Virus record (IMG/VR): IMGVR_UViG_3300031884_000002
Coordinates: 186,001 to 250,000 of that record
Strand: one strand, 5' to 3'
DNA length: 64,000 bases
In this document: one piece after another, positions 2,509-39,095 of the stretch
How the letters are laid out: every line of letters starts with the position of its first letter
Position numbering within the stretch: position 1 is the first letter of the stretch
The notes under the pieces: model-generated
What the model was told of the DNA's origin: nothing
The model's input: the letters and a program-made list of their open reading frames with translations, nothing else
The model's database searches: none
Made by a program: the position numbers and the translations under genes

Positions 2509-2973
2509 TTATTTTAAAAGTTCGGGATGTTGATGAATATTCCCAATAATTTGTCGATTATGCATACGATATAATGATAAATTATTTTGTATTTTTATTA
2601 GATTATTTTCTAACTTTCTGTTTATAACATAACCAGCATCTGCTCCATATATATCCTCAGACGGAATACACCATTCTACTACTCCATTTCCAACAAAATC
2701 ATTCATATCACACCGGTAACAATACTTGATAATATCTCCTTCATAAATCTCAATTCCATTATTATCTTTTAATCCAGTAAATTGGTCTATTATAAGACGA
2801 CCATTGAATGTTCTACTTAATATAGAATTAGGATAATCAAATGGCTCCTCCGATTCACAATCACACCGGTCCCAACAATCGCAATCTGGGTCTAACATAT
2901 ATTCTTTATAAGGAATGCCATCTATAATCTTTTTTTCTTTAGTATCCCATATTTTAAACTTTAATTCACGCAT
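2509..2973 (-). CDS. YopX family protein
   Basis: MRELKFKIWD..QFTGLKDNNGIEIYEGDII..IIGNIHQHPELLK. Confidence 0.9.
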   Translation of the reverse strand: MRELKFKIWDTKEKKIIDGIPYKEYMLDPDCDCWDRCDCESEEPFDYPNSILSRTFNGRLIIDQFTGLKDNNGIEIYEGDIIKYCYRCDMNDFVGNGVVEWCIPSEDIYGADAGYVINRKLENNLIKIQNNLSLYRMHNRQIIGNIHQHPELLK

Positions 2974-6289: not shown

Positions 6290-7138
6290 TCAGTCAAATG
6301 ATAAAATATCATCGTTTTTTTCTAGATTTCTCGCTTCTACATATCCCCGACCTTTAACTAAAAATTTATGATTTGGAGTAGTTGTAACAATAGTTCCATC
6401 ATCCATTTCCACATCTATAGTATCGGATACTCCATTTATATATAACTTTGTAATATATTGCCAATCATTATTCTCATCTTTAACCATAATCTTAGAAGTT
6501 ACAGGTAAAAATTGTTTTTCATTTAAATTTTCATAATCTTCTAATTTATATCCATTTATCTCAAACAATTCCGATAAAGTTTTATCTCCGATAGAAGTTT
6601 TTATAATAGTCTCGGGAACAACACAACCTTCAGGTTTTATACATGTAATTCTTGCCGCTTGATTTATGCCTATTTTCTTAGCCCATATTTTATTAGTTTC
6701 GACTGCTACTTTGGCAGATTGTTTCTGAAACTCTGGATTGAATAATATATCAGGATTATCCATCATTCCAGTTATAGAAACTCCTAATAATGCTTCGTTA
6801 TTTGACAATTCCTCGGAAGTATGTCCTAAATATGGAAATGAAGTATATCCAGCTTGTAAAGTTCCTATTAAAGTAGCCGCCCAAGTAGCGTCTTTAAACT
6901 TATCACTGGAAGTTATTTTTGCTCCATTTATGGAAGTTAAATTACACATTTGGAATCCACAACGCCCATCATCGGTTACTGGAATAAATGAAATTTCGAA
7001 GCAGTTATGTATTAAAATATTATTAGCAAAAAAATTATGATTATTCTTTACAGATATATCATATACATCTTCATTTGGACGAACCGTTATTTTTTTTATT
7101 TTAATTCTGGTAATTTTTTTATTCTGTTTTGTTTCCAT
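6290..7138 (-). CDS. nrdJ: Class II RNR fragment 2: IntC (45 aa) - extein (126 aa) - IntN (111 aa)
   Basis: VYDISVKNNHNFFANNILIHN|CFEISF..FQMCNLTSIN..LLGVSITG..TCIKPEG|CVVPET..TTPNHKF. Confidence 0.92.
   Translation of the reverse strand: METKQNKKITRIKIKKITVRPNEDVYDISVKNNHNFFANNILIHNCFEISFIPVTDDGRCGFQMCNLTSINGAKITSSDKFKDATWAATLIGTLQAGYTSFPYLGHTSEELSNNEALLGVSITGMMDNPDILFNPEFQKQSAKVAVETNKIWAKKIGINQAARITCIKPEGCVVPETIIKTSIGDKTLSELFEINGYKLEDYENLNEKQFLPVTSKIMVKDENNDWQYITKLYINGVSDTIDVEMDDGTIVTTTPNHKFLVKGRGYVEARNLEKNDDILSFD
6293..6625 (-). mobile_element. Split intein RNR-2, N-fragment (111 aa)
   Basis: Block A CVVPETII and block B TTTPNHKF, then stop. Confidence 0.9.
7004..7138 (-). mobile_element. 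Split intein RNR-1, C-fragment (45 aa, +1 Cys)
   Basis: VYDISV..HNFFANNILIHN|C. Confidence 0.92.
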
Positions 7139-10151: not shown

Positions 10152-11501
10152 TCATTTTTTAGTAAATAATTTATCTCCTATAGATAAGCCACTTATAATA
10201 CTTTTTAGTTTTTCATATTGTGTTGGAAACCTATGATTTTCAGAACATTCTATAATTTTACCACTTTTCAATGTAATTCTATACACTGGTTGTTTTTTAA
10301 CAGGATATATATAAGATACTTTTCTATATCCGTTATGTGTTAATATCTTATCTCCAACTATTATATTTTTGATTTTAATATTACCTTTAAGTTCTTCGTT
10401 CACAATAGTTTGTAAAGACAAACACCGATTAGCCTGAGAGACCGACCAACCGGCTATTTGGAGTGACCCTAATACAGACCTGACCTCTTCGCTTTTTGCC
10501 CCGGCATCTTCATATGATTTAGAACCTTTGGGTGCAGTCGAAGATAATAACAAATCCACATAGTCAACTACCCACATATCAATATGAATACCGGTGACAA
10601 TTTGAAGATGTTCGGTAAATGCTTTTAAAGTATCAGCCGTAGCTGTTTTTAATGGAAAATATTTAATGTATAAAGTGCCAGCCCCATTAGCCTTCGTAGC
10701 ATCCAACGCTACTTTTATTTTAGCCTTATTTGCTTGACGTTCTTGAAATGGAATGCCAGATAAATAAGAATCATATCTGTGACCAGTATAATCAGCACTT
10801 AATTCCATGGTAAAATGAAGAACATTTTTTCCTTGTTTAAGTGCTTCCGCTCCAAAATTAACCAATGTCCAGCTTTTACATCCACCGGGATTTCCACATA
10901 TAATACCCAATTCTCCCTTTCCCAATCCGCCATCCATCAATTTATCTAAAATTGGTTGATTTGTTTTTATTGTGTATCGAGTATCTTTAGACGACCTAGT
11001 TTCAAAACTCTCAAAATAATTTTCCCCAATATCTCTATCCATTCCAGCTTTAAGAGCTTCATCTAACTTTAATTTAATAGTATCAAACTTTTGATTTTTA
11101 AGAAGTTCTAATGAATCTGCAATTGCCGATTTTAATTTTTGATGCTTACAAAACTCTAAAAACTTATCCTTAACATACGTTAAATCGGTAGCAGATGCAT
11201 TTTTAAAAGCGGATAATAACTGGGATTTTACCGCCATTTGAAGGGTACTATCAGAAATTAAATTACATTCTTGTCCCAAAATCATCATAGTAGGAGTATC
11301 TTTATACTGTTTCCAGTGGTCTATGATTTTGGAAACTATCCATTTTTGTTGGTCGGTATCAAAAAAATCAGGAGTTAATATATCATATATTCTCTCCAAA
11401 AAAGCCCTATCTGAAATTAGAACTGAAATTACTTTTGCTTGAAACTCTTTTTCATATTGTCGGGATGCTAACGTATCTACTTTATTATATTCTTCATTCA
11501 T
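10152..11501 (-). CDS. Replicative helicase (T4 gp41/DnaB-like) N-fragment: 359-aa extein plus 90-aa IntN
   Basis: GGLGKGEL..GNPGGCKS, HFTMEL, VVDYVDLL, SQANR|CLSLQT..CSENHRFPT. Confidence 0.9.
   Translation of the reverse strand: MNEEYNKVDTLASRQYEKEFQAKVISVLISDRAFLERIYDILTPDFFDTDQQKWIVSKIIDHWKQYKDTPTMMILGQECNLISDSTLQMAVKSQLLSAFKNASATDLTYVKDKFLEFCKHQKLKSAIADSLELLKNQKFDTIKLKLDEALKAGMDRDIGENYFESFETRSSKDTRYTIKTNQPILDKLMDGGLGKGELGIICGNPGGCKSWTLVNFGAEALKQGKNVLHFTMELSADYTGHRYDSYLSGIPFQERQANKAKIKVALDATKANGAGTLYIKYFPLKTATADTLKAFTEHLQIVTGIHIDMWVVDYVDLLLSSTAPKGSKSYEDAGAKSEEVRSVLGSLQIAGWSVSQANRCLSLQTIVNEELKGNIKIKNIIVGDKILTHNGYRKVSYIYPVKKQPVYRITLKSGKIIECSENHRFPTQYEKLKSIISGLSIGDKLFTKK
10155..10424 (-). 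mobile_element. Split intein helicase, N-fragment (90 aa)
   Basis: Block A CLSLQT and block B CSENHRF; resembles gp41-type split inteins as I recall them. Confidence 0.9.
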
Positions 11502-12545: not shown

Positions 12546-13097
12546 TTATTGAGGATAAATGTCTTTTAGAAATTGAGGAGTTTCAAATACACTACCTTCT
12601 TTACAAATATTTCTATATAAATCTTTATAATATGTATTAGTATGAATATATTTAGGATTATATTCATCAAGTTTATGTAATAATGAAGTTGTCGTGGTTG
12701 GCATTTTTAAACACCATCCTACCATTGGTTTAGTATAAAAATCATCTTGGTCTGTTGGACTATCGAATACCACTTCTCCATATTCAATATCAACCTTATA
12801 TTCTCCATATACTGGTTCTTTTCGATACATATCATTATTATCATATGTAATAGGAATATAATTACGAGACATTTTAAGTATATCTCCTTCATATAAATCT
12901 TTTAAATAGTTGTCCTGAAGCCCAGTATATCTTTGTATAACACATTCTGATAAAGGTATTAACACAGTTGGTCCTGCATTTCCTAATACTACAATACAAT
13001 TAGATTCCAGTTCTTCAAATATAAAGTAATACATGTTATTTAACTTTTGATTCCATGCTCTAAATTTAAGAGTATTTATATCCATATTATTTTCCAT
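12546..13097 (-). CDS. YopX family protein (second copy)
   Basis: LKFRAWN..QRYTGLQDNYLKDLYEGDIL..GSVFETPQFL. Confidence 0.85.
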   Translation of the reverse strand: MENNMDINTLKFRAWNQKLNNMYYFIFEELESNCIVVLGNAGPTVLIPLSECVIQRYTGLQDNYLKDLYEGDILKMSRNYIPITYDNNDMYRKEPVYGEYKVDIEYGEVVFDSPTDQDDFYTKPMVGWCLKMPTTTTSLLHKLDEYNPKYIHTNTYYKDLYRNICKEGSVFETPQFLKDIYPQ

Positions 13098-14169
13098 CTC
13101 TTACTTGATTATCCAAGAATGAAAATACGTCAGATACCCAATTATTATAATCTGGCATATTTACATCTAATCTATCATTTCTTACTAATTTAAAAAATGC
13201 ATTTCTATCTAATTTTGGTATTTTATTTTCAGTTAATATTTCTTGAAGATGTAATTGGGAAGTAGTTCCTAACATAGTATCTTTTAATTGCATCAATGCA
13301 TAATTACGTTCTATTATAGATTTATTAGTAACAATATTCTCACATACTACAAACTTATTTCGCATATCAGTCGCATGATTCACAATCTCATCAATAGTAT
13401 GAATTGTTTCTTCTTTTAAATATGGAAAATGCTTACATACAGTTTTTAAACCGGCTCTTTCAATTCCATTTATATTATCACTTTTATCTCCGTCCATACT
13501 TCTAAATAACACAAAATTATTAGGATGAATATTATATTCCGAAATAACTTCATTCACTCCATATATTCGTTTTTTAGTAGGAGAATATATTTGAACTTTA
13601 GAACTTGCCAACTGTAAAAAATCCTTATCAGTTGACATTATAGTTACTTTTTTGGAGTTTTTAAATTGCTCCAATGCCAGATAAGATATTACGTCATCGG
13701 CTTCAACCATATTTTCGCTTACTATATTTACTGGTAATACTTGAAGATAATTTATAAATTGAAGATATTCTTTTTGTTTCTGTTGGTCTTCATTATCAGG
13801 AGTAGAATCATCATCATATACTCTATTCAATCTAATTTTATTTGTGCTATATGCTTTATAGGCAGGGAAGATTGCTTTTCTTTTTTGAGACCCCCCAACT
13901 CCGTCAAATACTACTATACAACGAGAAGGAGTTAATAATTTAATTGCCGCACCTAAAGATTTTAGAGAAGCCACAACTCCACCACTATGTTCGCCATTGG
14001 CATTCATTGAGACGGTGGCACAAAATGCTCGGATGAATAGATTATTACCATCAACTATTAAGATATGATTATTAGTTTTATCTCTCCAGTTTAAATGGGA
14101 ATCCTTCATTTCGGACTTTATGTTTTTAAAAAAAGAAAATAACTTGGCTTTATCTAAATCATCACTCAT
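13087..14169 (-). CDS. 5'-3' exonuclease/flap endonuclease (PolI 5' nuclease, T4 RNase H-like)
   Basis: ILIVDGNNLFIRAF, VVFDG, EADDVI, STDKDFLQL, GDKSDNINGI. Confidence 0.92.
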   Translation of the reverse strand: MSDDLDKAKLFSFFKNIKSEMKDSHLNWRDKTNNHILIVDGNNLFIRAFCATVSMNANGEHSGGVVASLKSLGAAIKLLTPSRCIVVFDGVGGSQKRKAIFPAYKAYSTNKIRLNRVYDDDSTPDNEDQQKQKEYLQFINYLQVLPVNIVSENMVEADDVISYLALEQFKNSKKVTIMSTDKDFLQLASSKVQIYSPTKKRIYGVNEVISEYNIHPNNFVLFRSMDGDKSDNINGIERAGLKTVCKHFPYLKEETIHTIDEIVNHATDMRNKFVVCENIVTNKSIIERNYALMQLKDTMLGTTSQLHLQEILTENKIPKLDRNAFFKLVRNDRLDVNMPDYNNWVSDVFSFLDNQVRDGK

Positions 14170-14483
14170 AAGTTTTTAATCCAATTCCATAATTTATTAT
14201 ACCATTTTATAATATATTTTCGTTTATGTTCTTTAATTGCGGTTTTCAATACTTTAGTAGGATATAATCTATTATTTAAGTTTGGTTCATCCAAATAAAA
14301 AACCAATCCAGTTGCTTTAGATAAAGGCTGTATTTCTAAAAACTCTTTGATATCAAATGCCGGAAACTTTTTATTTATAGTAGGTAATGTTATTCCCTTA
14401 AAAGAATCAATAGTATTTGATTCAATTGGAATGTTGAATGGTTTACGTTGTTCGTTTAATATTTTTTCTTTACGATGTCCCAT
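14166..14483 (-). CDS. Small chimeric protein: major-capsid-like segment plus prohead-protease-like segment
   Basis: aa 28-65 FKGITLPTINKKFP..EIQPLSKATGLVFYLD resembles the gp23 QPxxxPTGxxF region; aa 68-91 match ORF 17310..17717. Confidence 0.55.
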   Translation of the reverse strand: MGHRKEKILNEQRKPFNIPIESNTIDSFKGITLPTINKKFPAFDIKEFLEIQPLSKATGLVFYLDEPNLNNRLYPTKVLKTAIKEHKRKYIIKWYNKLWNWIKNL

Positions 14484-14489
14484 ATAAAA

Positions 14490-14517
14490 AGTATATACTA
14501 AATTGAAACATAATCAA
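14490..14517 (-). promoter_or_regulatory. sigma70-type promoter TTGATT-16-TATACT, 6 nt from ATG
   Basis: Read on the minus strand. Confidence 0.65.
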
Positions 14518-14534
14518 CTTATTTTAGAAAATAA

Positions 14535-14561
14535 AAAAGAGTGGACTTTCACCACTCTTTT
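14535..14561 (-). terminator. Intrinsic terminator after the recA C-fragment
   Basis: aaaagagtgg..ccactctttt inverted repeat with T-tract. Confidence 0.75.
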
Positions 14562-14580
14562 CGGTAACTATTTAGAAGAG

Positions 14581-15858
14581 TTATTCTTCTGATTTTGATT
14601 CAGTAATAGGAGGAACTTCCTCTGATACTTCTTCAATGTCTTCCACAATTTTAGAATTAGGGTCTCTATAATTCATAATATAATCATTACAAATCACTTG
14701 ATAAAACTCTTCTTTAAGATCTTTATCAGAGTTCATAAGTTCTACAAACTTAGAAGTATTAAACTCCAATGATTCTCCATTTGCTCTTTTCCATGTATAT
14801 TTAGCAGCAGTTCCAGTTATAATTCCACGCTCTTTTGAGAAATTAAGCCAACTTGCCAAATCTTGGATACCGGAATCATAATGGATTTCAAATTGTGCTC
14901 CTCGTGCTCCCGGTCCCATTCTACTCTTAATAACTTGACAAGTACATTTTACTCCAATTACTTCATCATTTTTCTTCAATTTTCCAATGGTTCCCATTCT
15001 TACTCTGGTAGAACACGCATAACTTAAAGATTTTCCACCGGGAGTAGTCCATTTGTCTCCGAATGGACCTGCATTCATATTAAATCTTAATTGATTAGTA
15101 AATACAATCAGGATTCTTTGTTTAGCAATAAGACCGGTTATTTTTCGGAATGCCTTTCCTAAGATTAGGGATTTTCCTGTATTATATCCATCAATCCCAT
15201 GTTCTGCTTCAAGTTCTTTTTCGATAGTAGCTTGTGCTACTGAATCAATAAAAATAGTTAATAATTTATCTTTATTTGCTTTTCTAAAAGCACCTATACA
15301 AGTTTCTATATGTGTAAATAAATCTTCCAATGTTGTAAATGGAACATAATTTGTATTTTTAACATTTACTCCAAGCGCAGTCCAAAACTTTCTATCAACT
15401 GCAAACTCAGAATCAAAAAATACACTATATCCACCAAGTTTACTTGTTTCTGCAATAATATGAGCGCACATTAAAGATTTACCGGTGTTATGATTTAGCA
15501 TCCCATTTCCAAAATAACAATGTTCTGGATGTTCGACCGTAATATCTACAATTTTATATTTTCCAATTAAAGCAACTGATAATACTATACTATAAGTTTC
15601 ATCATCACATAAAATACTATGTTTATTAGGGATTATATCTTTACATTCTACCCATCCAGAATTTGTAAAAAACTTATGTTCTCGACTCACTTTTATAGTT
15701 TTTCCATTATCTAATGTTACTAAATATGTATCCAATATACCTTTATTAACAAATCTGGTTATTTTTGTATATTCACCATTCAATGTTTTTACTTTTATGG
15801 TTTTTCCTTCTTTAAGGAGAGAATCTACTTCTCCTACAGTTATTATTTTTTTATTCAT
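14581..15858 (-). CDS. recA: RecA/UvsX C-fragment: 124-aa IntC plus 301-aa C-extein
   Basis: ..VSREHKFF..IVDITVEHPEHCYFGNGMLNHN|TGKSL..FFDSE..IFIDSVA..FTNQLR..TTPGGKSL. Confidence 0.9.
   Translation of the reverse strand: MNKKIITVGEVDSLLKEGKTIKVKTLNGEYTKITRFVNKGILDTYLVTLDNGKTIKVSREHKFFTNSGWVECKDIIPNKHSILCDDETYSIVLSVALIGKYKIVDITVEHPEHCYFGNGMLNHNTGKSLMCAHIIAETSKLGGYSVFFDSEFAVDRKFWTALGVNVKNTNYVPFTTLEDLFTHIETCIGAFRKANKDKLLTIFIDSVAQATIEKELEAEHGIDGYNTGKSLILGKAFRKITGLIAKQRILIVFTNQLRFNMNAGPFGDKWTTPGGKSLSYACSTRVRMGTIGKLKKNDEVIGVKCTCQVIKSRMGPGARGAQFEIHYDSGIQDLASWLNFSKERGIITGTAAKYTWKRANGESLEFNTSKFVELMNSDKDLKEEFYQVICNDYIMNYRDPNSKIVEDIEEVSEEVPPITESKSEE
15487..15858 (-). mobile_element. Atypically split intein RecA, long C-fragment (blocks B, F, G; +1 Thr)
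   Basis: Block B SREH and terminal HN|T in one ORF; block A absent. Confidence 0.9.
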
Positions 15859-16940
15859 ATAATATTTCTTTTTAATTTTTCTAAATTTTTATTGTCTATT
15901 ATTATTTTACCAGAATTTATAAGAGTCGATATAAAATTAATATCATATTTTGATATGTCAATATCATTCTCCGTCAAATACCCTCCATATTTTAAATTAA
16001 ATCTGGAACAATATTCTTTTAATGCCTCTGATTTTAACACATTTAATCTAATTGGCAACATATTATATGGTTTTATTTCATAAATCGAATTTCCTATTAC
16101 TATATCAGGACAGTATGTTCGACCAATTCCCATATCATCTTTATATTTTATTCTATGTTTTGATATTTGGAATGTAATATTGTTAAAAATCAAATGACAC
16201 ATTATTCGCAATTCTAATGAAGATCTACAAAAATATTTTATTCCATCGTTTAATATCCAACACTTAACTCCAATTCCTGCATTTTTTCCGGGCGATTTAC
16301 CATACATCGGATTTAACCGTCCGGTTTGTGGATTATTTTTAGGATATCCGTATTTTTCACATAATTGCTTGCATTTTACACTTCCAAATCCAAATTCATT
16401 CTTCAATGTATTATAAACTTGCTGTTTATATTTTAACTTATGTTTTAATTCCTCAAATCTCTTTATGATTTTTGAGGTAATTGGTTTTAATTCTACTCCC
16501 CGTGTAATTGGTATTGCTTTTCTTCCGTTTATCTTAGACTGTATATTAATATAATTTTTAGAATTCTCTTTTCTCTGTATATCTAAATTTTTATATTTTA
16601 AAAAATATAAAACTTGCTTATGCGAAATATTTTTCATTATGTTTTTAACATCTTGTAATATTCCTCCATTATTAATGGATTCCAATACTAACATTCCATA
16701 TATTTTATCTAATTCTATAAGTTTTATATTTCTTTTAGCAAGCGCATATTCACTAAGTTGATTTGATTTATATTTAATGTTATTATATTTTAATTTATCA
16801 ACTAAATTAAATTCATTTGCAATTCTCCTAATAGGCTTTCTTCCAATTTTTAATTGGAAGATTTCCGTTTCGCTTAAACCATCGTGTATAGATGATATAA
16901 TCGTGTCTATTGTCTGTGCATCTGTTACTTTTTTAGCCAT
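15855..16940 (-). CDS. Free-standing endonuclease, TnsA-like PD-(D/E)xK, between the RecA intein halves
   Basis: NPMYGK motif; CRSSLE..IKYKD..RTYCPDIVI..YEIKP; ATGA overlap with the IntC ORF. Confidence 0.75.
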   Translation of the reverse strand: MAKKVTDAQTIDTIISSIHDGLSETEIFQLKIGRKPIRRIANEFNLVDKLKYNNIKYKSNQLSEYALAKRNIKLIELDKIYGMLVLESINNGGILQDVKNIMKNISHKQVLYFLKYKNLDIQRKENSKNYINIQSKINGRKAIPITRGVELKPITSKIIKRFEELKHKLKYKQQVYNTLKNEFGFGSVKCKQLCEKYGYPKNNPQTGRLNPMYGKSPGKNAGIGVKCWILNDGIKYFCRSSLELRIMCHLIFNNITFQISKHRIKYKDDMGIGRTYCPDIVIGNSIYEIKPYNMLPIRLNVLKSEALKEYCSRFNLKYGGYLTENDIDISKYDINFISTLINSGKIIIDNKNLEKLKRNII

Positions 16941-16987
16941 AATATTTAATATTGGTAATATAATATAAATATCAGGCTACATAAAAA

Positions 16988-17305
16988 TTATTCAATAATA
17001 ACTTCAATTAAAGTATCTTCCGTAACACAGCCTTCTAATCCTGATAATTCGGTCACTCTACCTACAGGTAGACCTCCGTGTGCTCTATTAGAAATTGCCA
17101 AATCTAATAAAGTTGAACCGGTTGATACCCATTCTTTTATTTCGGATGGATTATCATCTTCATCTACGAAATATGCTACTTTGGTTCCATCTTTAGATGC
17201 CTTATTCATTGCGGTTTGTAGCAACAACGCTAAATCATCTCTATTAACATTAGACTCTACTTCTACATGTTTTGATTTTGTATTTATATTTTTTTCTTTT
17301 GCCAT
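16988..17305 (-). CDS. recA: RecA/UvsX N-fragment: 92-aa extein plus 13-aa IntN
   Basis: VSTGSTLLDLAIS..GGLPVGRVTELSGLEG|CVTEDTLIEVIIE*. Confidence 0.9.
   Translation of the reverse strand: MAKEKNINTKSKHVEVESNVNRDDLALLLQTAMNKASKDGTKVAYFVDEDDNPSEIKEWVSTGSTLLDLAISNRAHGGLPVGRVTELSGLEGCVTEDTLIEVIIE
16991..17029 (-). mobile_element. Atypically split intein RecA, 13-aa N-fragment
   Basis: Block A only (CVTEDTLI), then TAA. Confidence 0.85.
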
Positions 17306-17309
17306 AATT

Positions 17310-17717
17310 TTATTTTTTAATTTGTTCTAAAGGTTCATTTGAAATAAGTGCTATATATTCAATTTCATAATTAGAAACTAAATATGAACCATTTTCTTGT
17401 TTATCAGATAAGTTTCCAATACCAACTGGGGTTAATGTAAAGGTTCCGCTTTCTAAGAATTCTTTAATTGGAATTTGTTTAGGATTTACAGTTGTATCTA
17501 AACAAAGAGATACTTTTCCATCTGGACTTAAGTTAATATCCGAAATTTGAGAACAAATATTTGTAATATCCTGATTCATACCACTATATAAAAATGCATG
17601 TTTAGTTTCAACATATTGTTTTTTATATTTAATAATAGCTTCATTTAAGACATCATTAGGATATATTCTATTATTTAGAGATAATTTATTTGCCATAAAT
17701 GGAAATTCTACATCCAT
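17310..17717 (-). CDS. Catalytically degenerate prohead protease (T4 gp21-like) paralog
   Basis: NNRIYPNDVL..ICSQI..TPVGIGNL..NYEIEYIALISNEP follows the gp21 motif order without the His/Ser/Asp motif residues. Confidence 0.6.
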   Translation of the reverse strand: MDVEFPFMANKLSLNNRIYPNDVLNEAIIKYKKQYVETKHAFLYSGMNQDITNICSQISDINLSPDGKVSLCLDTTVNPKQIPIKEFLESGTFTLTPVGIGNLSDKQENGSYLVSNYEIEYIALISNEPLEQIKK

Positions 17718-17723
17718 AGAAAT

Positions 17724-17751
17724 ATTATATCAACTTTTTTAGTTTTATCAA
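17724..17751 (-). promoter_or_regulatory. sigma70-type promoter TTGATA-16-TATAAT, 6 nt from ATG
   Basis: Read on the minus strand; extended -10 TG present. Confidence 0.7.
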
Positions 17752-17767
17752 CTTTTTTTAAATAAAT

Positions 17768-17808
17768 AAAAAGACCGTATAATACTAAAAATATTATACG
17801 GTCTTTTT
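17768..17808 (-). terminator. Intrinsic terminator after the SSB gene
   Basis: aaaaagaccgtataata..tattatacggtcttttt long inverted repeat. Confidence 0.8.
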
Positions 17809-17820
17809 TGTAATTATATT

Positions 17821-18651
17821 TTAAGATGATTTTGCAAAAAACTTGTCAAAATCTTCTTCTTCTGCCGCAGTTGGAACCGGCGTTGCAGTTTCAGCAACGT
17901 CTTTTTTATCAACTGTAGCCGATGCTTTTTCGACTTCGGCTGTCGAAGGCTCTTGACCTTCTGGAGCCAAATAATCTTCGATAATTGCGTCCAATTCCTC
18001 ATACGTCTTCAATGGGAATACTTGAGTAATATCCAATTGTTTTCGGATGCTTTCCATAGCCTCTTTATTGGTAGGAGATACCGCTAAAGTTTTCTTCGGA
18101 CTTGGAATAATAGTTGTCTCAGGAAAAGGTTTTCCAGTTTTCTTATCAATTTTCTGACCTTTTTCAATGAATTTAACGTCAATATCATTGCCTTCACGTA
18201 AATCTGTAATATCGCCCCATTCAGTATTACAATAAGAAAGCAATTGCTTATATACCGTAATTCCAAATCCCCAGAAACGAACCCCTTGTTCCTCTTCACC
18301 ACGAACAATAATAGGAACATAAGTTCTAGCAACCGACTTAAAGTGCTTGTTTGCTAATTCCTTTTCTTCCGTAGTACCGTTTGTAGTAAGAGCCTCAAAT
18401 CTCTCTTGAAATGGATCAGGTTTTCCAAAAGTGGAAGGTGCCAATATAGAAGCAATTCCATTGAACTTGTAATAAAACTTCAATTCAATAAATGGAGAAT
18501 CTTGTTCTTCACCATTTGGGCGATAAGGAACTATTCGGATTCTTTGAGTACCTTCTCTTGGTTTCCAGAGAAGACGATTAAAATCAACGGTTTTTTTACC
18601 AGATTCTAATTGTTTAAGTTTATTTTGTAGTTTTTCTATGTTAAGTGCCAT
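17821..18651 (-). CDS. Single-stranded DNA-binding protein (T4 gp32-like)
   Basis: LWKP..IRIVPY..PFIE..VRGEEEQGVRFWGFG..GDITDLREGND; acidic tail EEEDFDKFF; next to recA. Confidence 0.8.
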   Translation of the reverse strand: MALNIEKLQNKLKQLESGKKTVDFNRLLWKPREGTQRIRIVPYRPNGEEQDSPFIELKFYYKFNGIASILAPSTFGKPDPFQERFEALTTNGTTEEKELANKHFKSVARTYVPIIVRGEEEQGVRFWGFGITVYKQLLSYCNTEWGDITDLREGNDIDVKFIEKGQKIDKKTGKPFPETTIIPSPKKTLAVSPTNKEAMESIRKQLDITQVFPLKTYEELDAIIEDYLAPEGQEPSTAEVEKASATVDKKDVAETATPVPTAAEEEDFDKFFAKSS

Positions 18652-19902: not shown

Positions 19903-21252
19903 TTAAAATTGCAATTGAAGACTTCCATATGAATCTCCAATATAGCTTTTAACTGGAAATATGGAATTAAACGACATAATTTTTACAACTTCATCCAATA
20001 CTTCTTCCCCATCTGGGATATAAAAATCATATAGAATTGAATCATATGTATATAATATTGGCATCGTTTTTTTATTCTTCAAATATTCTTCCACTAAATT
20101 AAGTCGGGAAATTGCAAGTTCTCCTTCAAATGCTTGTAAAATATAATTAAATAATTTATATGGATTTGGGTCTAATATATGCTTGGTTGTTATTTTTCGA
20201 TTAAATATAGGGGTTAGAATATATCCATTAGATTTGAAAAACTCCCATTTATCAAACACATAAGTTTTTAAGTTTGATAAATATTTTATATGAGAATATT
20301 TATCTTCGATACCGCCATAAAGTTGTCTAAATGTGATTCGTTTGGCTTCTTTTATTTCGTCTACGGATATATTTTGTTTTTGAAAATATAATTTTGCCAA
20401 ATATTCATAAATATCGATTGAAGTATCCAATGTATAATTAGTCAGATAACATATTATACGAGGATGAAATGCACTGTAATCCACCAATGCCATTTTACCA
20501 TCTTTTCCATATCTGGAAATAAACTTATCTCTGGTTCCATCGAAATTATTCAGTGCTGCAAAATTGATATTGTTAAACTTATTAGATGGTCTTCCAGTTG
20601 AAGTGTATAAATTATATTCACTATATATAATATTATTGACTGGATATTGTGAATATTGTTTATAATATAACTCTCTATCTACATATATTCCATTTTTTTC
20701 AATTCTGGATAATGCCGGAATAATATTATTATTTATACTATTAAAAGCAATATCTAAGTTAGAAGAGTTAATCAACGGGTTAATATCAATCCATATATCT
20801 TCAAACATTTCCAAATGTTTTAATATCGGTATTGTTTGATTTAACTTCCCAATATTATCGTATGTTCGATAAATAAAATCATGCGCCGATGTTGAATAAT
20901 CGGTTAATTTTAAAATTTCATTATCGTTTAAATAAGAGGATAAATTTATATCATATACATTCTTACAATTCAATAGTTGGATAAATGATTTTTTATCAAT
21001 TACCCATTTTATGTTTTCCGATGACAATATAAATTGTAAAAACTGTATTTTTAATTCGGTTGATAAAGAAGAATCTGGATGATTTATAGATATATAATAA
21101 GTCATCTCTGATTTTATATGTTTAATAAAAATTACACTTATTTTATTTTCAGCCGAATGTAATTTATAGTCGATTGGAATAATATGAATTGCCAATGCAT
21201 CCGTTCCTATAGAACTGATGAACCGTTCAAAATCTAATTTATTTTCAATCAT
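19903..21252 (-). CDS. Compact family A DNA polymerase-like protein
   Basis: TSTGRPS, motif A VDYSAFHPR, motif B EAKRITFRQLYG, NYILQ, motif C LYTYDS. Confidence 0.75.
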   Translation of the reverse strand: MIENKLDFERFISSIGTDALAIHIIPIDYKLHSAENKISVIFIKHIKSEMTYYISINHPDSSLSTELKIQFLQFILSSENIKWVIDKKSFIQLLNCKNVYDINLSSYLNDNEILKLTDYSTSAHDFIYRTYDNIGKLNQTIPILKHLEMFEDIWIDINPLINSSNLDIAFNSINNNIIPALSRIEKNGIYVDRELYYKQYSQYPVNNIIYSEYNLYTSTGRPSNKFNNINFAALNNFDGTRDKFISRYGKDGKMALVDYSAFHPRIICYLTNYTLDTSIDIYEYLAKLYFQKQNISVDEIKEAKRITFRQLYGGIEDKYSHIKYLSNLKTYVFDKWEFFKSNGYILTPIFNRKITTKHILDPNPYKLFNYILQAFEGELAISRLNLVEEYLKNKKTMPILYTYDSILYDFYIPDGEEVLDEVVKIMSFNSIFPVKSYIGDSYGSLQLQF

Positions 21253-21295
21253 TGAACGGACATAGTATCAGAACTGATTAAAAACTCAAGTATTT

Positions 21296-23758
21296 TTAAA
21301 CGGGAAGAAGACCAATTTTTGTTCGAACTCCGTTTCGGAGTGGAATTACTCCAGCCGTGATTGTAGTCGTCCATTTTCCGGCTTCTATATTTTCAGTAAT
21401 ATTTGTTATTCTAAATATAATATTTGTTTCACTATATGGTTCAGGAAGACCTCGAACTAAAAACATCATAAATGTTCGTAACCCACCTATACCTTGAATA
21501 GTAAAAGTAGCTTGTATACCGGGCATTATTCCAACATACGTTGGATTATTATCATAATCTCCATCGTCCATTAACATATTAACAACATCAGATGCGGGAA
21601 GTACTAGTCGTCGTATAATAGTTTTATCATCGGAAACCGTAGTTAATTGAAACATTTCAGGAGTTGCCGATAAAGTTTGTAAATCCTTCATCAATGTAAT
21701 TCCATCGTTTTTTGGTTTATCATTTTTTACATCGTTGGAGTTTTTGATGGAATCATCTAAAAATAATCGGTCTCTAAACATATAGTCTAATAATTCATTA
21801 GTTCCATTATTTGATTTTGTATCGGCGTTTTTTCGTATATTAGTAGCCGCATATAATGAACGTATCGCTTGACCCGAACTAATAGTAGGCTTAAACTCCA
21901 TTCCTGTCAAGATTGAATTATCTGTCATATATTCAAATATAAATGGAGTCCCTACATTATCAGGAATATATTTAGTATCGATTATTTTCATAGTCGATTG
22001 ATTTCCATCTGGAACGGGATTTCCGGTTGAAGATACTAATCTAAAATCCCAGAAATTTCCACATGCTGAACTTATAGAAGACATCATTTTATCTATTAAA
22101 TCAGTATAAGTAATAATTCCATCATCATGCACTAATTTTTTAAGAAAATTAACATTTACATATAAATTTTTTAAATATCCATTTTCAAAAGTTCCAGTTC
22201 TTACCGTTGGAAACTCACATATGGAATCCACCGGAGAAACTCCATTGTTATATCTTCCACTGTTAATAAGTTCATCTAAATTATCTCGATATGTCCCTCC
22301 CAATTGAATACATACATGATATAACCTTTTGTCGGCGGCATCTTCATTTTGAGGTTTAATAAAATTAGAACATATTGATAATTGTGTTATATCATCATTT
22401 GATATATTATTTGTAGCTTGTGCATCCTGTCCATAAAAATATTTAGGTGCAAATGTATTGGGAATCAATAATATTCCACCATCGCTCGATATCATGTTTT
22501 TATGCCCAGTTATTAAAATGTCATCTATGTCAATTCTAAAAAACTCTCCTCCACTAATAGTCGAATAATCCACATTACAATAATTAAATATTTCAATGAT
22601 AAGTCCTAAGTTAATCCACGTATTTGCCAAGGGAGAAGTTATATCAAAATCATCTTCCCTATGTACGAACGTATTTATGAGATTGTTTTCAGAGTTAATA
22701 TCTCTTCCATAAAATATACCATAAAGATATTCTTTCCAATTATCTTCATGTTTCTGTTTTAAATATTTTATGAACTTATTCAAAAATACTTCATCCGATG
22801 TTTCAGGAGTTCCTTTATGAAGATTGCTGTTTTTGTCAATTACGGATTTTAATAAATCTATTCTCTCATCTACGAAATCAATTAAACTTCCGAATGGCAA
22901 TTTTGCATTGGATGTATTTGAAGTCGTATCTTTCCCATCGCTATCAACCGGAACATCTTCAGTAGTGGAATTAATTATCAATCCCGAATACATTCTATCT
23001 CTGGAAGAAATTTCAGTCATACACTTAATGGTAGTTCCTTCGACTGACCAATTAAAATTACTAACTGTTCCAAGCATTACGTCGTAATTTCCATTTGAAC
23101 CTAAAATATTCTGTGTATATAGTGGATATGGGTCTCGGAATAATGTATTTAAATTTGGAACACTGGTTACATCTATCAAATTCATAGGATTAAAATTATT
23201 CCATCCCCATTCCAATACAAATGTTATAGAAGGAACTAAAAAATAAGGAGTCATATATTCCAATTGTGCTCTGGAAAAACAAACCCAATTTATAGTTGCC
23301 TTTCTATATAATTCATGTTGAATAATTATATTTATACTTTCAATTTGAGGGCTGGGAACTTGAATTGGATATGTAGAAGTTCTATTATTATTTATTAGAG
23401 TATGTGGAGTAAATGAGGAATTAGGCTGAAATCCTATAATACTTTCATTGTATCCGCTAGTTCTGGAAAATCCATAAGTGCTAAAAAAATCAGAAGGAGA
23501 TGCTAATATAAATCCGGGTTTATTTGCGTTTACACCGGTTTCCATACCTTGTCCGTTACTTGTAACTCTAATCCACGGAGTTTGTGGTCCTCTATATTTA
23601 GACCAATTTCCAGTAGTATTACCCCAATCCCCATTATTAGCATTTACATAATTCAATCCTCTATTATCACCTTCTCTTCTTGTTAATTCTGATTGTATTT
23701 GAATTGGGATGTTACATGGATACCATGGAATCAAATTTGGAATCGAAGTTATTGACAT
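21296..23758 (-). CDS. Putative baseplate hub/tail-associated protein
   Basis: 820 aa; LEWGW and FRITNITENIEAGKWTTTI hub-like ending; downstream of tape measure and LysM-like genes. Confidence 0.55.
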   Translation of the reverse strand: MSITSIPNLIPWYPCNIPIQIQSELTRREGDNRGLNYVNANNGDWGNTTGNWSKYRGPQTPWIRVTSNGQGMETGVNANKPGFILASPSDFFSTYGFSRTSGYNESIIGFQPNSSFTPHTLINNNRTSTYPIQVPSPQIESINIIIQHELYRKATINWVCFSRAQLEYMTPYFLVPSITFVLEWGWNNFNPMNLIDVTSVPNLNTLFRDPYPLYTQNILGSNGNYDVMLGTVSNFNWSVEGTTIKCMTEISSRDRMYSGLIINSTTEDVPVDSDGKDTTSNTSNAKLPFGSLIDFVDERIDLLKSVIDKNSNLHKGTPETSDEVFLNKFIKYLKQKHEDNWKEYLYGIFYGRDINSENNLINTFVHREDDFDITSPLANTWINLGLIIEIFNYCNVDYSTISGGEFFRIDIDDILITGHKNMISSDGGILLIPNTFAPKYFYGQDAQATNNISNDDITQLSICSNFIKPQNEDAADKRLYHVCIQLGGTYRDNLDELINSGRYNNGVSPVDSICEFPTVRTGTFENGYLKNLYVNVNFLKKLVHDDGIITYTDLIDKMMSSISSACGNFWDFRLVSSTGNPVPDGNQSTMKIIDTKYIPDNVGTPFIFEYMTDNSILTGMEFKPTISSGQAIRSLYAATNIRKNADTKSNNGTNELLDYMFRDRLFLDDSIKNSNDVKNDKPKNDGITLMKDLQTLSATPEMFQLTTVSDDKTIIRRLVLPASDVVNMLMDDGDYDNNPTYVGIMPGIQATFTIQGIGGLRTFMMFLVRGLPEPYSETNIIFRITNITENIEAGKWTTTITAGVIPLRNGVRTKIGLLPV

Positions 23759-38573: not shown

Positions 38574-39095
38574 TCAAGTTTTAGATAATCGAATTATTTT
38601 ATCTATGGAAGTTTCATAGGAATTAGAATTATGTAATATACCTACTCCTCCTTCTTTATTCCAGTCTTGAATTGTATCTTCCATATCATCTATAAGTATT
38701 CCAATATTAGTGGCATAGCACTTCTTCCATCTTCTACCCCGAACTATGTATATTTTCTCGTATATTATCTCTGGGATGTGTTTTTTAAGCCACATCTTCT
38801 TCCCTTGTTCTACGACCATAGAATAACCTTCATCGGATGTTCCAGTGGAAGATAGAATACGAATATCAGAATAATGAGTTATGGCGGCATTGTATAATTC
38901 TTTACCTCCCTTAATCCAATCCATATCAGCCCAAAAATCAATTCCGGCATCTAAAAATATTTGTCTGGCTTTCTTATCTCCATGTTTTTGGTTATATTGT
39001 TTTATAGTTAATCCTCCCGATAAATTGGAATATGATTTATCAAAGTCACATAACACCCCATCCAAATCTAAAAATAATTTGTAATTTCTATTCAT
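38574..39095 (-). CDS. HAD-family 5'(3')-deoxyribonucleotidase-like protein
   Basis: LFLDLDGVLCDF, ILSS, GKKMWL, ILIDD..W..GG.GILH. Confidence 0.85.
   Translation of the reverse strand: MNRNYKLFLDLDGVLCDFDKSYSNLSGGLTIKQYNQKHGDKKARQIFLDAGIDFWADMDWIKGGKELYNAAITHYSDIRILSSTGTSDEGYSMVVEQGKKMWLKKHIPEIIYEKIYIVRGRRWKKCYATNIGILIDDMEDTIQDWNKEGGVGILHNSNSYETSIDKIIRLSKT

What the first reader, a model, noticed from the sequence alone, without database searches (positions are those of the whole stretch)
17310..17717. Apparently inactive prohead protease paralog in the replication module
Seen: a 135-aa ORF between SSB and recA with its own leaderless promoter. Known: gp21-family proteases run NxRxYP..GExxHP..SH..SSRGxG..DxVxxP. 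Here the scaffold remains (NNRIYP..CSQI..TPVGIG..ALISNEP) but the His, Ser and Asp positions are replaced. Inference: a pseudo-protease acting as a decoy for protease-sensing immunity, a timing inhibitor of the true protease, or a binder of LxE-tagged cargo.
Basis: partly seen in the sequence, partly recalled or inferred. Interest (0 to 1): 0.6.

Follow-up and report, generated by a model that had tools for sequence, protein, structure and literature searches.

The report
Catalytically dead mini prohead-protease gene
A lake-water jumbo phage carries, in front of its recA gene, a small intact gene whose product has the fold of the T4 head-maturation protease but has lost all three catalytic residues; it belongs to a previously undescribed lineage of such dead mini-proteases, and what they do is not known.

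Summary
Window 17310-17717 (-) is an intact 135-aa ORF between a gp32-type SSB and recA.

**What it is**
- **Fold.** It is confidently predicted (pLDDT 93) and matches T4 gp21 far above anything else (Z 13.2 against 6.6 for the next hit).
- **Catalytic residues.** The gp21 His, Ser and Asp positions are a shortened loop with no His, Thr96 and Ala123. No other catalytic set is conserved.
- **Family.** It is not a one-off. At least 22 metagenomic proteins, 20 of them 116-147 aa long, share the loss. They sit on one side of a 98/92-supported branch, apart from the 14 triad-bearing proteases compared.
- **True protease.** The phage's own 208-aa protease has the triad intact. It lies in the head module about 88 kb away.

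**New points**
- **Promoter.** The "own" promoter is the recA promoter.
- **Accessory gene.** A relative with 93% identical SSB has the same terminator and promoter feeding straight into recA. Its 20-kb contig carries no copy of this gene, so the gene is dispensable.
- **Second copy.** A truncated copy (14166-14483) lies on the other side of recA.

**Function (inferred)**
It is probably an early-made cytoplasmic binder of the protease or of its Glu-containing cleavage sites. A predicted complex with the true protease got only weak support. The immune-decoy idea remains possible and untested.

The parts
17310..17717 (-). Mini-gp21 gene (P0001, 135 aa): gp21/Peptidase S77 fold with no catalytic His, Ser or Asp
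   Evidence: ORF. AF2 pLDDT 93.3, pTM 0.84. 5jbl: Foldseek E 4.6e-8, VIA Z 13.2, rmsd 2.8 A over 123 residues. Catalytic columns. Family conservation.
17724..17751 (-). Sigma-70-like promoter TTGATA-16-TATAAT with TG extension. The -10 element ends 6 nt before the ATG. The same element drives recA in a relative that lacks the gene.
   Evidence: (11 of 12, best in 7 kb). Conserved in L021 at 6898-6927, followed there by a 23-nt leader and recA. Not verified by RNA.
17768..17808 (-). Intrinsic terminator-like hairpin closing the gp32 SSB gene
   Evidence: 19 pairs, T run. Conserved in L021.
17821..18651 (-). gp32-type single-stranded DNA-binding protein, the upstream neighbour
   Evidence: PF08804, E 5e-10.
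16988..17305 (-). recA N-terminal part. It starts 4 nt after the mini-gp21 stop, so it is probably co-transcribed. It ends 13 residues into an intein.
   Evidence: PF00154. Junction sequence. Uninterrupted 393-aa recA in L021.
14166..14483 (-). Truncated second copy (P0002, 105 aa). It keeps only the first ~30 residues of the mini-gp21 domain (NNRLYP plus the helix) after an unrelated ~55-aa N-terminus. Its stop overlaps the start of the flap-endonuclease gene.
   Evidence: BLASTP to P0001 43% over 30 aa, E 5e-7. A2 profile E 7.1e-8, positions 6-35. Absent from L021. No relatives in the word search.
14490..14562 (-). Terminator-like hairpin after recA (14562-14534) and promoter-like site (14517-14490) ending 6 nt before the P0002 ATG. 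Same layout as in front of P0001.

Best explanation
**Shown.**
- The gene encodes a compact, well-folded core of the T4 gp21 (Peptidase S77) prohead-protease fold.
- All three catalytic residues are gone.
- It also lacks the stretch matching the first ~39 residues of gp21 and the ~40-residue C-terminal tail.
- It belongs to an old, diversified lineage of such triad-less mini-gp21 proteins in uncultivated large phages.
- Two motifs that are invariant in the active proteases compared are also kept in this lineage: N-x-R-I-Y-P and G-x-G.
- The gene is dispensable. It sits between the recA promoter and the recA start codon, far from the head genes, while the true protease is in the head module.

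**Inferred.**
- It is transcribed from a host-type promoter together with the recombination genes, before the late head genes.
- Without the terminal extensions it probably stays in the cytoplasm rather than entering the prohead.
- It acts by binding, not cutting. The likeliest partners are the phage's own protease subunits or the Glu-containing cleavage motifs they recognise.
- The effect would be to restrain or mask proteolysis outside the prohead. Which partner, and to what end, is open.
For: **Fold.** pLDDT 93.3. T4 gp21 (5jbl) is the top hit at Foldseek E 4.6e-8 and VIA Z 13.2, against 6.6 for the next entry. Model residues 1-128 align with gp21 residues 40-173. BFVD and the ESM Atlas return prohead proteases.

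**Homology.**
- All 27 tblastn hits lie on prohead-protease genes.
- All 14 aligned family members hit phrog_207, best E 2e-15; 12 of 14 hit PF03420, best E 5.5e-9.
- One member (P0006) matches 503 phage records, and all 25 listed lie on prohead-protease genes, 22 of them annotated as such.

**Loss of catalysis.**
- H85 and S140 are the residues mutated to kill T4 gp21 (PMC12991175). The third member is Asp (PMC5694885).
- All 14 triad-bearing relatives keep H, S and D. All 22 triad-less ones have no His, have T, R, S, V, Q or C at the Ser column, and have no Asp.
- Five members contain no His at all.
- The family-invariant residues are N15, R17, I18, Y19, P20, A27, G99 and G101.

**One lineage.** A single branch with 98/92 support separates triad-less from triad-bearing proteins. 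The phage's own protease falls in the triad clade.

**Position.**
- The gene lies in a replication module: DnaB-like helicase, flap endonuclease, recA, SSB and polymerase.
- The true protease sits near the terminase and portal genes.
- Relatives lie among early-type genes such as gp32, endonuclease VII, RNA ligase, YopX and NUDIX, never in head modules.

**Dispensable.** L021 has gp32 at 93% identity, then the terminator and promoter, then recA directly.

**Binding to the protease.** The predicted complex with the true protease scored 0.39, against 0.02 for the best control. The tool's verdict was weak support. That mark was reached by 58 of 80 solved complexes and 2 of 110 mismatched pairs. 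At 0.60 or under, only 7 of those 80 solved complexes reached it, and so did both mismatches that passed. The runs shared at least 88% of contacts, and the partner's pLDDT was at least 84.
Against: - No experiment or RNA data bear on expression or binding.
- The complex score is weak. It may only echo the solved gp21 homopentamer, as the tool itself warns.
- The roles of the retained NxRIYP and GxG motifs are unknown. They may be needed only for folding.
- The gene is missing at this position in a close relative. A truncated copy lies nearby, and the region is full of mobile elements. All this would also fit a gene of little or no use to the phage.
- No model coordinates were available, so I could not check whether a peptide-binding groove survives.
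Confidence: 0.45

Rival explanations
1. Passenger or decaying gene. It is a leftover duplicate of a protease-like gene that travels with the mobile DNA around recA and does nothing useful for the phage.
For: - The gene is absent at this position from a relative whose SSB and flap endonuclease are 93% identical. recA itself is only 82-85% identical, which suggests exchange of this segment.
- A truncated copy lies on the other side of recA.
- An intein and a free-standing ORF interrupt recA.
- The word search found no close homologue.
Against: - The ORF is intact, and the fold is predicted at pLDDT 93 from only 14 sequences.
- Twenty-two diverged members at 22-38% identity keep the same length class and the same invariant residues.
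- The protein sequence is identical on 16 contigs. No differences were seen where an independent freshwater run covers it.
- A relative whose SSB is only 46% identical still carries an orthologue downstream of its SSB.
Confidence: 0.17
2. The fold has been recruited to recombination or replication, for example as a partner of the SSB or RecA. Its role would then have nothing to do with proteolysis.
For: - The gene lies between the SSB and recA and shares the recA promoter.
- Its closest relative, P0004, also lies downstream of a gp32-type SSB.
Against: - The close relative runs the same SSB and recA genes without it.
- Other family members lie next to unrelated early genes.
- The protein is acidic, pI 4.8, which is not what a DNA binder looks like.
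- Nothing in the fold searches points to a recombination mediator.
Confidence: 0.1
3. Counter-defence pseudo-protease. Made early, it would mask host sensors that are tripped by prohead-protease cleavage, such as the CBASS CD-NTase activation loops. Alternatively it would mop up free protease so that those sensors are not cut.
For: - Prohead-protease activity is a trigger of CBASS, through cleavage of I/LxE-type loops (PMC12991175).
- The gene is accessory, sits in an early-type region and has a patchy distribution, as anti-defence genes often do.
- The motifs kept are ones shared with the active enzymes.
Against: - This rests on inference only.
- The host and its defences are unknown.
- No known anti-defence family matched. 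I did not run the PADLOC library, which holds defence rather than anti-defence models.
- A dead enzyme is not an obvious decoy for a sensor that responds to activity.
Confidence: 0.12
4. It is still a protease that uses a different catalytic site.
For: Thr96 stands at the nucleophile position, and threonine can act as a nucleophile in other enzymes (established knowledge).
Against: - The Thr is not conserved: the column reads T, R, S, V, Q or C.
- There is no conserved His, Ser, Cys, Asp or Lys anywhere in the family.
- Five members have no His at all.
Confidence: 0.03

Closest known systems
T4 gp21 prohead (capsid assembly) protease, Peptidase S77 / PF03420, PDB 5jbl
   Same: - Same fold: Z 13.2, rmsd 2.8 A over 123 residues.
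- Detectable sequence homology over about 90% of the length.
- The NxRxYP and GxG motifs are shared.
   Different: - No His85, Ser140 or Asp equivalents.
- No counterpart of gp21's first ~39 residues, which include the nine self-cleaved residues that block the active site (PMC9958956), and no C-terminal tail.
- 135 aa against 212 aa.
- Lies in the replication module behind a host-type promoter, not in the head module.
- Scores below the Pfam gathering threshold, 15.7 against 27 bits.
The phage's own prohead protease (P0003, 208 aa, genome 291273-291899, outside the window)
   Same: A paralogue in the same genome. The two share the N-R-x-Y-P helix region at 37% identity over 27 residues.
   Different: - P0003 keeps H80, S133 and D160 and matches PF03420 at 79.7 bits.
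- It lies near the terminase and portal genes.
- It falls in the triad-bearing clade, so the two are not recent duplicates.
Diverged short paralogues of the phiKZ-type prohead protease: SPN3US gp117, 201phi2-1 gp206 (145 aa), PhiPA3 gp143 (136 aa) (PMC5694885)
   Same: The same kind of thing. Each is a short second copy of the prohead protease in a giant phage, lacks the C-terminal part and is of unknown function. The authors said they knew of no earlier report of such a paralogue.
   Different: - A different protease family (S80) and, as far as can be seen, a separate origin.
- No profile similarity to this family: hhalign probability 0.14%.
- gp117 keeps the Ser and Asp. The family here has lost all three residues.
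T4 Inh, the minor head protein annotated as an inhibitor of the gp21 protease
   Same: A phage-encoded protein annotated as inhibiting the prohead protease (annotation of NC_000866). This is the functional role considered here.
   Different: There is no sequence relation: hhalign probability 0.14%. Inh is a head protein encoded near the head genes.

Membership tests
Peptidase S77 (T4 gp21 prohead protease) | Match to PF03420 above the curated threshold of 27 bits | tested here: not met
   P0001 scores 15.7 bits, E 0.011, over residues 8-42 only. Relatives in the same clade reach E 5.5e-9.
Peptidase S77 (T4 gp21 prohead protease) | gp21 / herpesvirus-protease fold | tested here: met
   AF2 pLDDT 93.3. 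5jbl: Foldseek E 4.6e-8, TM 0.68-0.70. VIA Z 13.2.
Peptidase S77 (T4 gp21 prohead protease) | Catalytic His-Ser-Asp (T4 H85, S140, Asp) | tested here: not met
   The His loop is shortened and has no His. Thr96 stands at the Ser position and Ala123 at the Asp position. The catalytic residues are taken from PMC12991175 and PMC5694885.
Peptidase S77 (T4 gp21 prohead protease) | N-terminal pro-segment and C-terminal tail flanking the core | tested here: not met
   The model aligns with gp21 residues 40-173. The open frame has only 4 codons upstream of the ATG and 9 residues after the last motif.
Peptidase S77 (T4 gp21 prohead protease) | Gene lies in the head-morphogenesis module | tested here: not met
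   It lies between the SSB and recA. The head module holding the true protease is about 88 kb away.
Peptidase S77 (T4 gp21 prohead protease) | Cleaves head proteins after Glu in I/LxE motifs | not testable with these tools
   This needs biochemistry.
Triad-less mini-gp21 lineage (delimited here) | Short protein (mostly 116-147 aa) that keeps N-x-R-I-Y-P and G-x-G, has no His, Ser or Asp triad, and is separated from the active proteases in a tree | tested here: met
   Twenty-two members. Invariant residues. Split with 98/92 support. Only 14 active proteases were in the tree, and the rooting is arbitrary.
phiKZ-type protease paralogues (SPN3US gp117 group) | Detectable sequence relation to gp117 | tested here: not met
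   hhalign probability 0.14%, E 0.41.
T4 Inh protease inhibitor | Detectable sequence relation to Inh | tested here: not met
   hhalign probability 0.14%.

The most novel reading that the evidence does not exclude
Mini-gp21 proteins would be a class of phage counter-defence pseudoenzymes. Made early, these dead copies of the head protease would keep its peptide-recognition surface. They would either cover the protease-sensitive tripwire loops of host immune sensors, such as the CBASS CD-NTases, or sequester any protease that is free outside the prohead. Either way the cell would not notice head maturation.
Probability: 0.12. Interest if true: 0.85.

Novelty: new variant of a known kind. Interest (0 to 1): 0.5.

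Why it matters
Prohead proteases are among the most conserved enzymes of tailed phages and herpesviruses. A March 2026 preprint reports that their activity triggers bacterial CBASS immunity (PMC12991175).

A recurrent, diversified lineage of dead copies encoded outside the head module suggests that this fold has a second, non-catalytic use in phage infection. A parallel case exists in phiKZ-like phages and is still unexplained (PMC5694885).

If these proteins regulate or mask the protease, they would be a natural handle on when capsids mature and on protease-sensing defence. If not, they are still a clear, testable example of a viral pseudoenzyme.

The finding also corrects annotation. Several relatives match the protease family, and at least one similar short protein in public tables is named a prohead core scaffold protein. 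The members examined here lack the catalytic residues.

Tried and rejected
- **Close DNA relatives.** Megablast of the region against cultured phages found nothing.
- **Word-index protein search.** It found only the protein itself, on 16 contigs. This is why I used the exhaustive HMMER search.
- **Related loci.** The search with P0001 confirmed nothing.
- **Context of relatives.** Most contigs carrying relatives are 1.5-4 kb, so they gave little context.
- **Cultured phages.** tblastn with two family members (P0008 and P0006) matched one place per record in every listed row, always on the prohead-protease gene. No cultured phage with a sequence-detectable mini-gp21 turned up.
- **Short fold matches.** BFVD lists three proteins of 140-144 aa, one from Yersinia phage fHe-Yen9-04. 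I could not fetch their sequences to inspect the catalytic columns.
- **T4 Inh and SPN3US gp117.** Neither is related.
- **Expression.** All 20 runs that hold the phage are lake or freshwater DNA runs. None is RNA.
- **Variation.** Laying four runs on 5,001 bases, within the operators' 6,000-letter limit, showed no differences in the gene. No selection test was therefore possible.
- **T4 gp21 structure paper.** It is not held. I could not look up what the NxRxYP motif and the pentamer interface do.
- **P0002.** The word search found no relatives.

Full report
**1. Where the window lies**

The window is bases 186001-250000 of a 353,772-bp virus record that CheckV rates as complete. GC content is about 30%. 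The sequence is held by 20 lake-water and freshwater DNA runs and by no RNA run.

The finding lies in a replication and recombination block on the minus strand. In order it contains:
- a DnaB-like helicase at 10152-11501;
- a YopX protein;
- a flap endonuclease at 13087-14169;
- recA, in two pieces;
- the ORF in question;
- a gp32-type SSB at 17821-18651;
- a DNA polymerase fragment.

**2. The observation**

The 135-aa ORF at 17310-17717 (-) is real, and its stop-to-stop frame is 139 codons.

A hairpin terminator (17808-17768) closes the SSB gene. It is followed by TTGATA-16 nt-TATAAT with a TG extension, the best promoter-like site in the 7 kb scanned. This site ends six nucleotides before the ATG. 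That geometry predicts a leaderless mRNA, but no RNA data exist to confirm it.

About ten other genes in this genome have a TTGAC-like hexamer, a TATAAT box and an ATG 5-8 nt later. The layout therefore recurs in this phage and is not special to this gene.

**3. Homology and fold**

Pfam and PHROGs alone give only marginal N-terminal matches to the prohead protease: PF03420 at 15.7 bits and phrog_207 at E 3e-4.

The other evidence is much stronger:
- All 27 tblastn matches in cultured phages fall on prohead-protease genes, 26 of them annotated as such. Eight cover at least 80% of the protein.
- The exhaustive HMMER search found 13 short relatives, 116-144 aa long. A profile search added more.
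- All 14 aligned members hit phrog_207, best E 2e-15. Twelve hit PF03420.
- Among solved structures the profile finds only T4 gp21, E 3.6e-11.
- AlphaFold2 on the 14-sequence alignment gives pLDDT 93.3 and pTM 0.84.
- The model matches T4 gp21 (5jbl) at Foldseek E 4.6e-8 and VIA Z 13.2, rmsd 2.8 A over 123 residues. Model residues 1-128 align with gp21 residues 40-173.
- Herpesvirus proteases come next, at Z 6.6 or lower.
- BFVD and the ESM Atlas return prohead proteases.

**4. The catalytic site**

T4 gp21 is inactivated by H85A/S140A (PMC12991175). The third triad member is an Asp (PMC5694885).

I aligned 39 sequences in all: T4 gp21, the phage's own protease and the proteins found by the searches.
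- All 14 triad-bearing proteins keep GE-x-x-H, SSRG and the Asp. These are also invariant columns in the 13-sequence alignment of active proteases.
- All 22 triad-less proteins have no His at that position. They have T, R, S, V, Q or C at the Ser column, and no Asp.

In P0001 the His loop is shortened. One alignment places Met47 opposite His85 and the other places a gap there. Ser140 corresponds to Thr96 and the Asp to Ala123. The near-invariant second His of the active enzymes (the SH motif) is Gln57.

The only His in P0001 is His40. It sits in a column where the family mostly has Arg. Five family members have no His at all.

The family-invariant residues are N15, R17, I18, Y19, P20, A27, G99 and G101. 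None of them forms a plausible alternative catalytic set. The second refutation condition, an intact alternative site, is therefore not met either.

**5. A lineage, not an accident**

In a maximum-likelihood tree of 36 proteins, one branch with 98/92 support separates the 22 triad-less from the 14 triad-bearing proteins. The phage's own protease lies among the latter. P0001 is therefore not a recent duplicate of its resident protease.

Three caveats apply. The active proteases in the tree are the few that the mini-gp21 profile happened to find. The root is arbitrary. Several branches are long.

**6. The true protease**

The phage's own protease is 208 aa and matches PF03420 at 79.7 bits with H80, S133 and D160 intact. 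It lies at genome 291273-291899, among the terminase gene, a 1420-aa portal gene and homing-endonuclease genes.

**7. New: the gene is accessory and sits in the recA leader**

A 20-kb viral contig (L021) encodes an SSB 93% identical to this phage's. In it the same terminator and the same promoter are followed by a 23-nt leader and an uninterrupted 393-aa recA. Then come the recA terminator and the flap endonuclease.

Compared with that relative, this phage has three extra pieces:
- P0001, which replaces 14 nt of the recA leader;
- an intein plus a free-standing ORF inside recA;
- P0002, between the recA terminator and the flap-endonuclease start.

Protein identity is 93% for the SSB and the flap endonuclease but only 82-85% for recA. 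This suggests that the recA segment was exchanged.

A more distant phage (L004), whose SSB is 46% identical, carries the closest relative of P0001 (36% identity) two genes downstream of its SSB. Presence is therefore patchy, but the position recurs.

Other family members lie among small early-type genes: endonuclease VII, a T4-type RNA ligase, YopX, NUDIX and a faint denV-like hit. None lies among head genes.

**8. Function**

What is shown:
- a folded gp21 core with no catalytic residues;
- no counterpart of gp21's first ~39 residues, which include the nine residues that block the active site until self-cleavage (PMC9958956);
- no C-terminal tail. In the phiKZ-type enzyme that tail is inferred to target the protease into the prohead (PMC5694885);
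- retention of two motifs that are also invariant in active enzymes;
- a host-type promoter shared with recA;
- an acidic protein, pI 4.8.

From this I infer a cytoplasmic binding protein that is made before the head genes and acts on the protease or on its recognition motifs.

T4 gp21 is a pentamer (PMC9958956), so mixed oligomers are conceivable. The one complex prediction allowed paired P0001 with the true protease.
- It scored ipSAE 0.39 (runs 0.45, 0.30 and 0.39) against 0.02 for the best of three controls.
- The tool's verdict was weak support. The mark was reached by 58 of 80 solved complexes and 2 of 110 mismatched pairs.
- At 0.60 or under, only 7 of those 80 solved complexes reached it, and so did both mismatches that passed.
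- The runs shared at least 88% of contacts, and the partner's pLDDT was at least 84.
- Because a like complex (the gp21 pentamer) is solved, the tool warns that the score may reflect likeness rather than binding.

I therefore hold the protease/substrate-binding explanation at about 0.45. The rivals are:
- a gene of no use to the phage, 0.17;
- the counter-defence version, 0.12;
- a recombination accessory, 0.10;
- residual catalysis, 0.03.

**9. Comparison with what is known**

The protein is homologous to Peptidase S77 but fails that family's defining catalytic, architectural and positional features (see the membership table). I do not file it as a protease.

The nearest precedent in kind is the short diverged paralogue of the phiKZ-type protease: SPN3US gp117, 201phi2-1 gp206 and PhiPA3 gp143. 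Its function is unknown, and its authors said they knew of no earlier report of such a paralogue (PMC5694885). That group shows no profile similarity to this one and keeps Ser and Asp. T4 Inh, annotated as a protease inhibitor, is unrelated.

Four literature searches and a jumbo-phage comparative paper turned up no description of a triad-less S77 lineage. The library is incomplete, so this is not proof of absence.

**10. Verdict**

- This is a new variant of a known kind: a pseudoenzyme offshoot of the prohead protease.
- Interest is moderate. It would rise sharply if a link to protease-sensing immunity were shown.

Noticed in passing
window 14581-17305 (-): recA is split inside its Walker A motif by an intein that is itself split.
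- The N-terminal ORF (16988-17305) ends 13 residues into the intein, starting at the Cys after G-L-E-G.
- A 361-aa ORF with no family match follows (15855-16940). By eye it has a P-D...E-x-K nuclease-like motif.
- The next ORF (14581-15858) starts with about 123 intein residues (Pfam Intein_splicing) ending in H-N. It then resumes with T-G-K-S and the rest of recA.
- The relative L021 has an uninterrupted G-L-E-G-T-G-K-S.
- From memory, this looks like the atypical split inteins with a very short N-fragment described from phage genes in metagenomes.
   Followed up: partly
window 14166-14483 (-): A 105-aa ORF (P0002) keeps only the first ~30 residues of the mini-gp21 domain, after an unrelated basic N-terminus (pI 9.9).
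- It has its own terminator, promoter and 6-nt layout.
- Its stop overlaps the flap-endonuclease start (ATGA).
- It is absent from the relative L021, and the word search found no homologues.
- It may be a truncated duplicate or a chimeric small gene.
   Followed up: partly
whole genome G000, e.g. 132736, 34251, 123630, 188509 (window 2509-2973), 224574 (window 38574-39095): About ten more ORFs start 5-8 nt after a TATAAT box that is preceded by a TTGAC-like hexamer. Leaderless transcripts from host-type promoters may be common in this phage. There are also no obvious Shine-Dalgarno sequences before recA or the flap-endonuclease gene.
   Followed up: partly
outside the window: L016 13033-17295 (-) and 7507-9240 (-) (genome about 289.5-299.3 kb): The portal gene is 1420 aa long. 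HNH-endonuclease matches lie at residues about 190-300 and the portal match at 858-1206. This suggests an inserted element or a fusion. A 577-aa homing endonuclease lies directly downstream of the true protease. The genome seems rich in selfish elements.
   Followed up: no
window 19903-23758 (-): The 449-aa ORF matches only the C-terminal part of a DNA polymerase profile (positions 947-1210 of 1445). The adjacent 820-aa ORF has no family match. The polymerase may be split or very divergent.
   Followed up: no
window 17107-18299: One contig of an independent freshwater run (X17) joins 17107 to 18299, skipping 1191 bases that include P0001 and part of the SSB gene. Only 24 letters lie on the shorter side. 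This is probably a related organism or an assembly artefact, but it could be a variant that lacks the gene.
   Followed up: no
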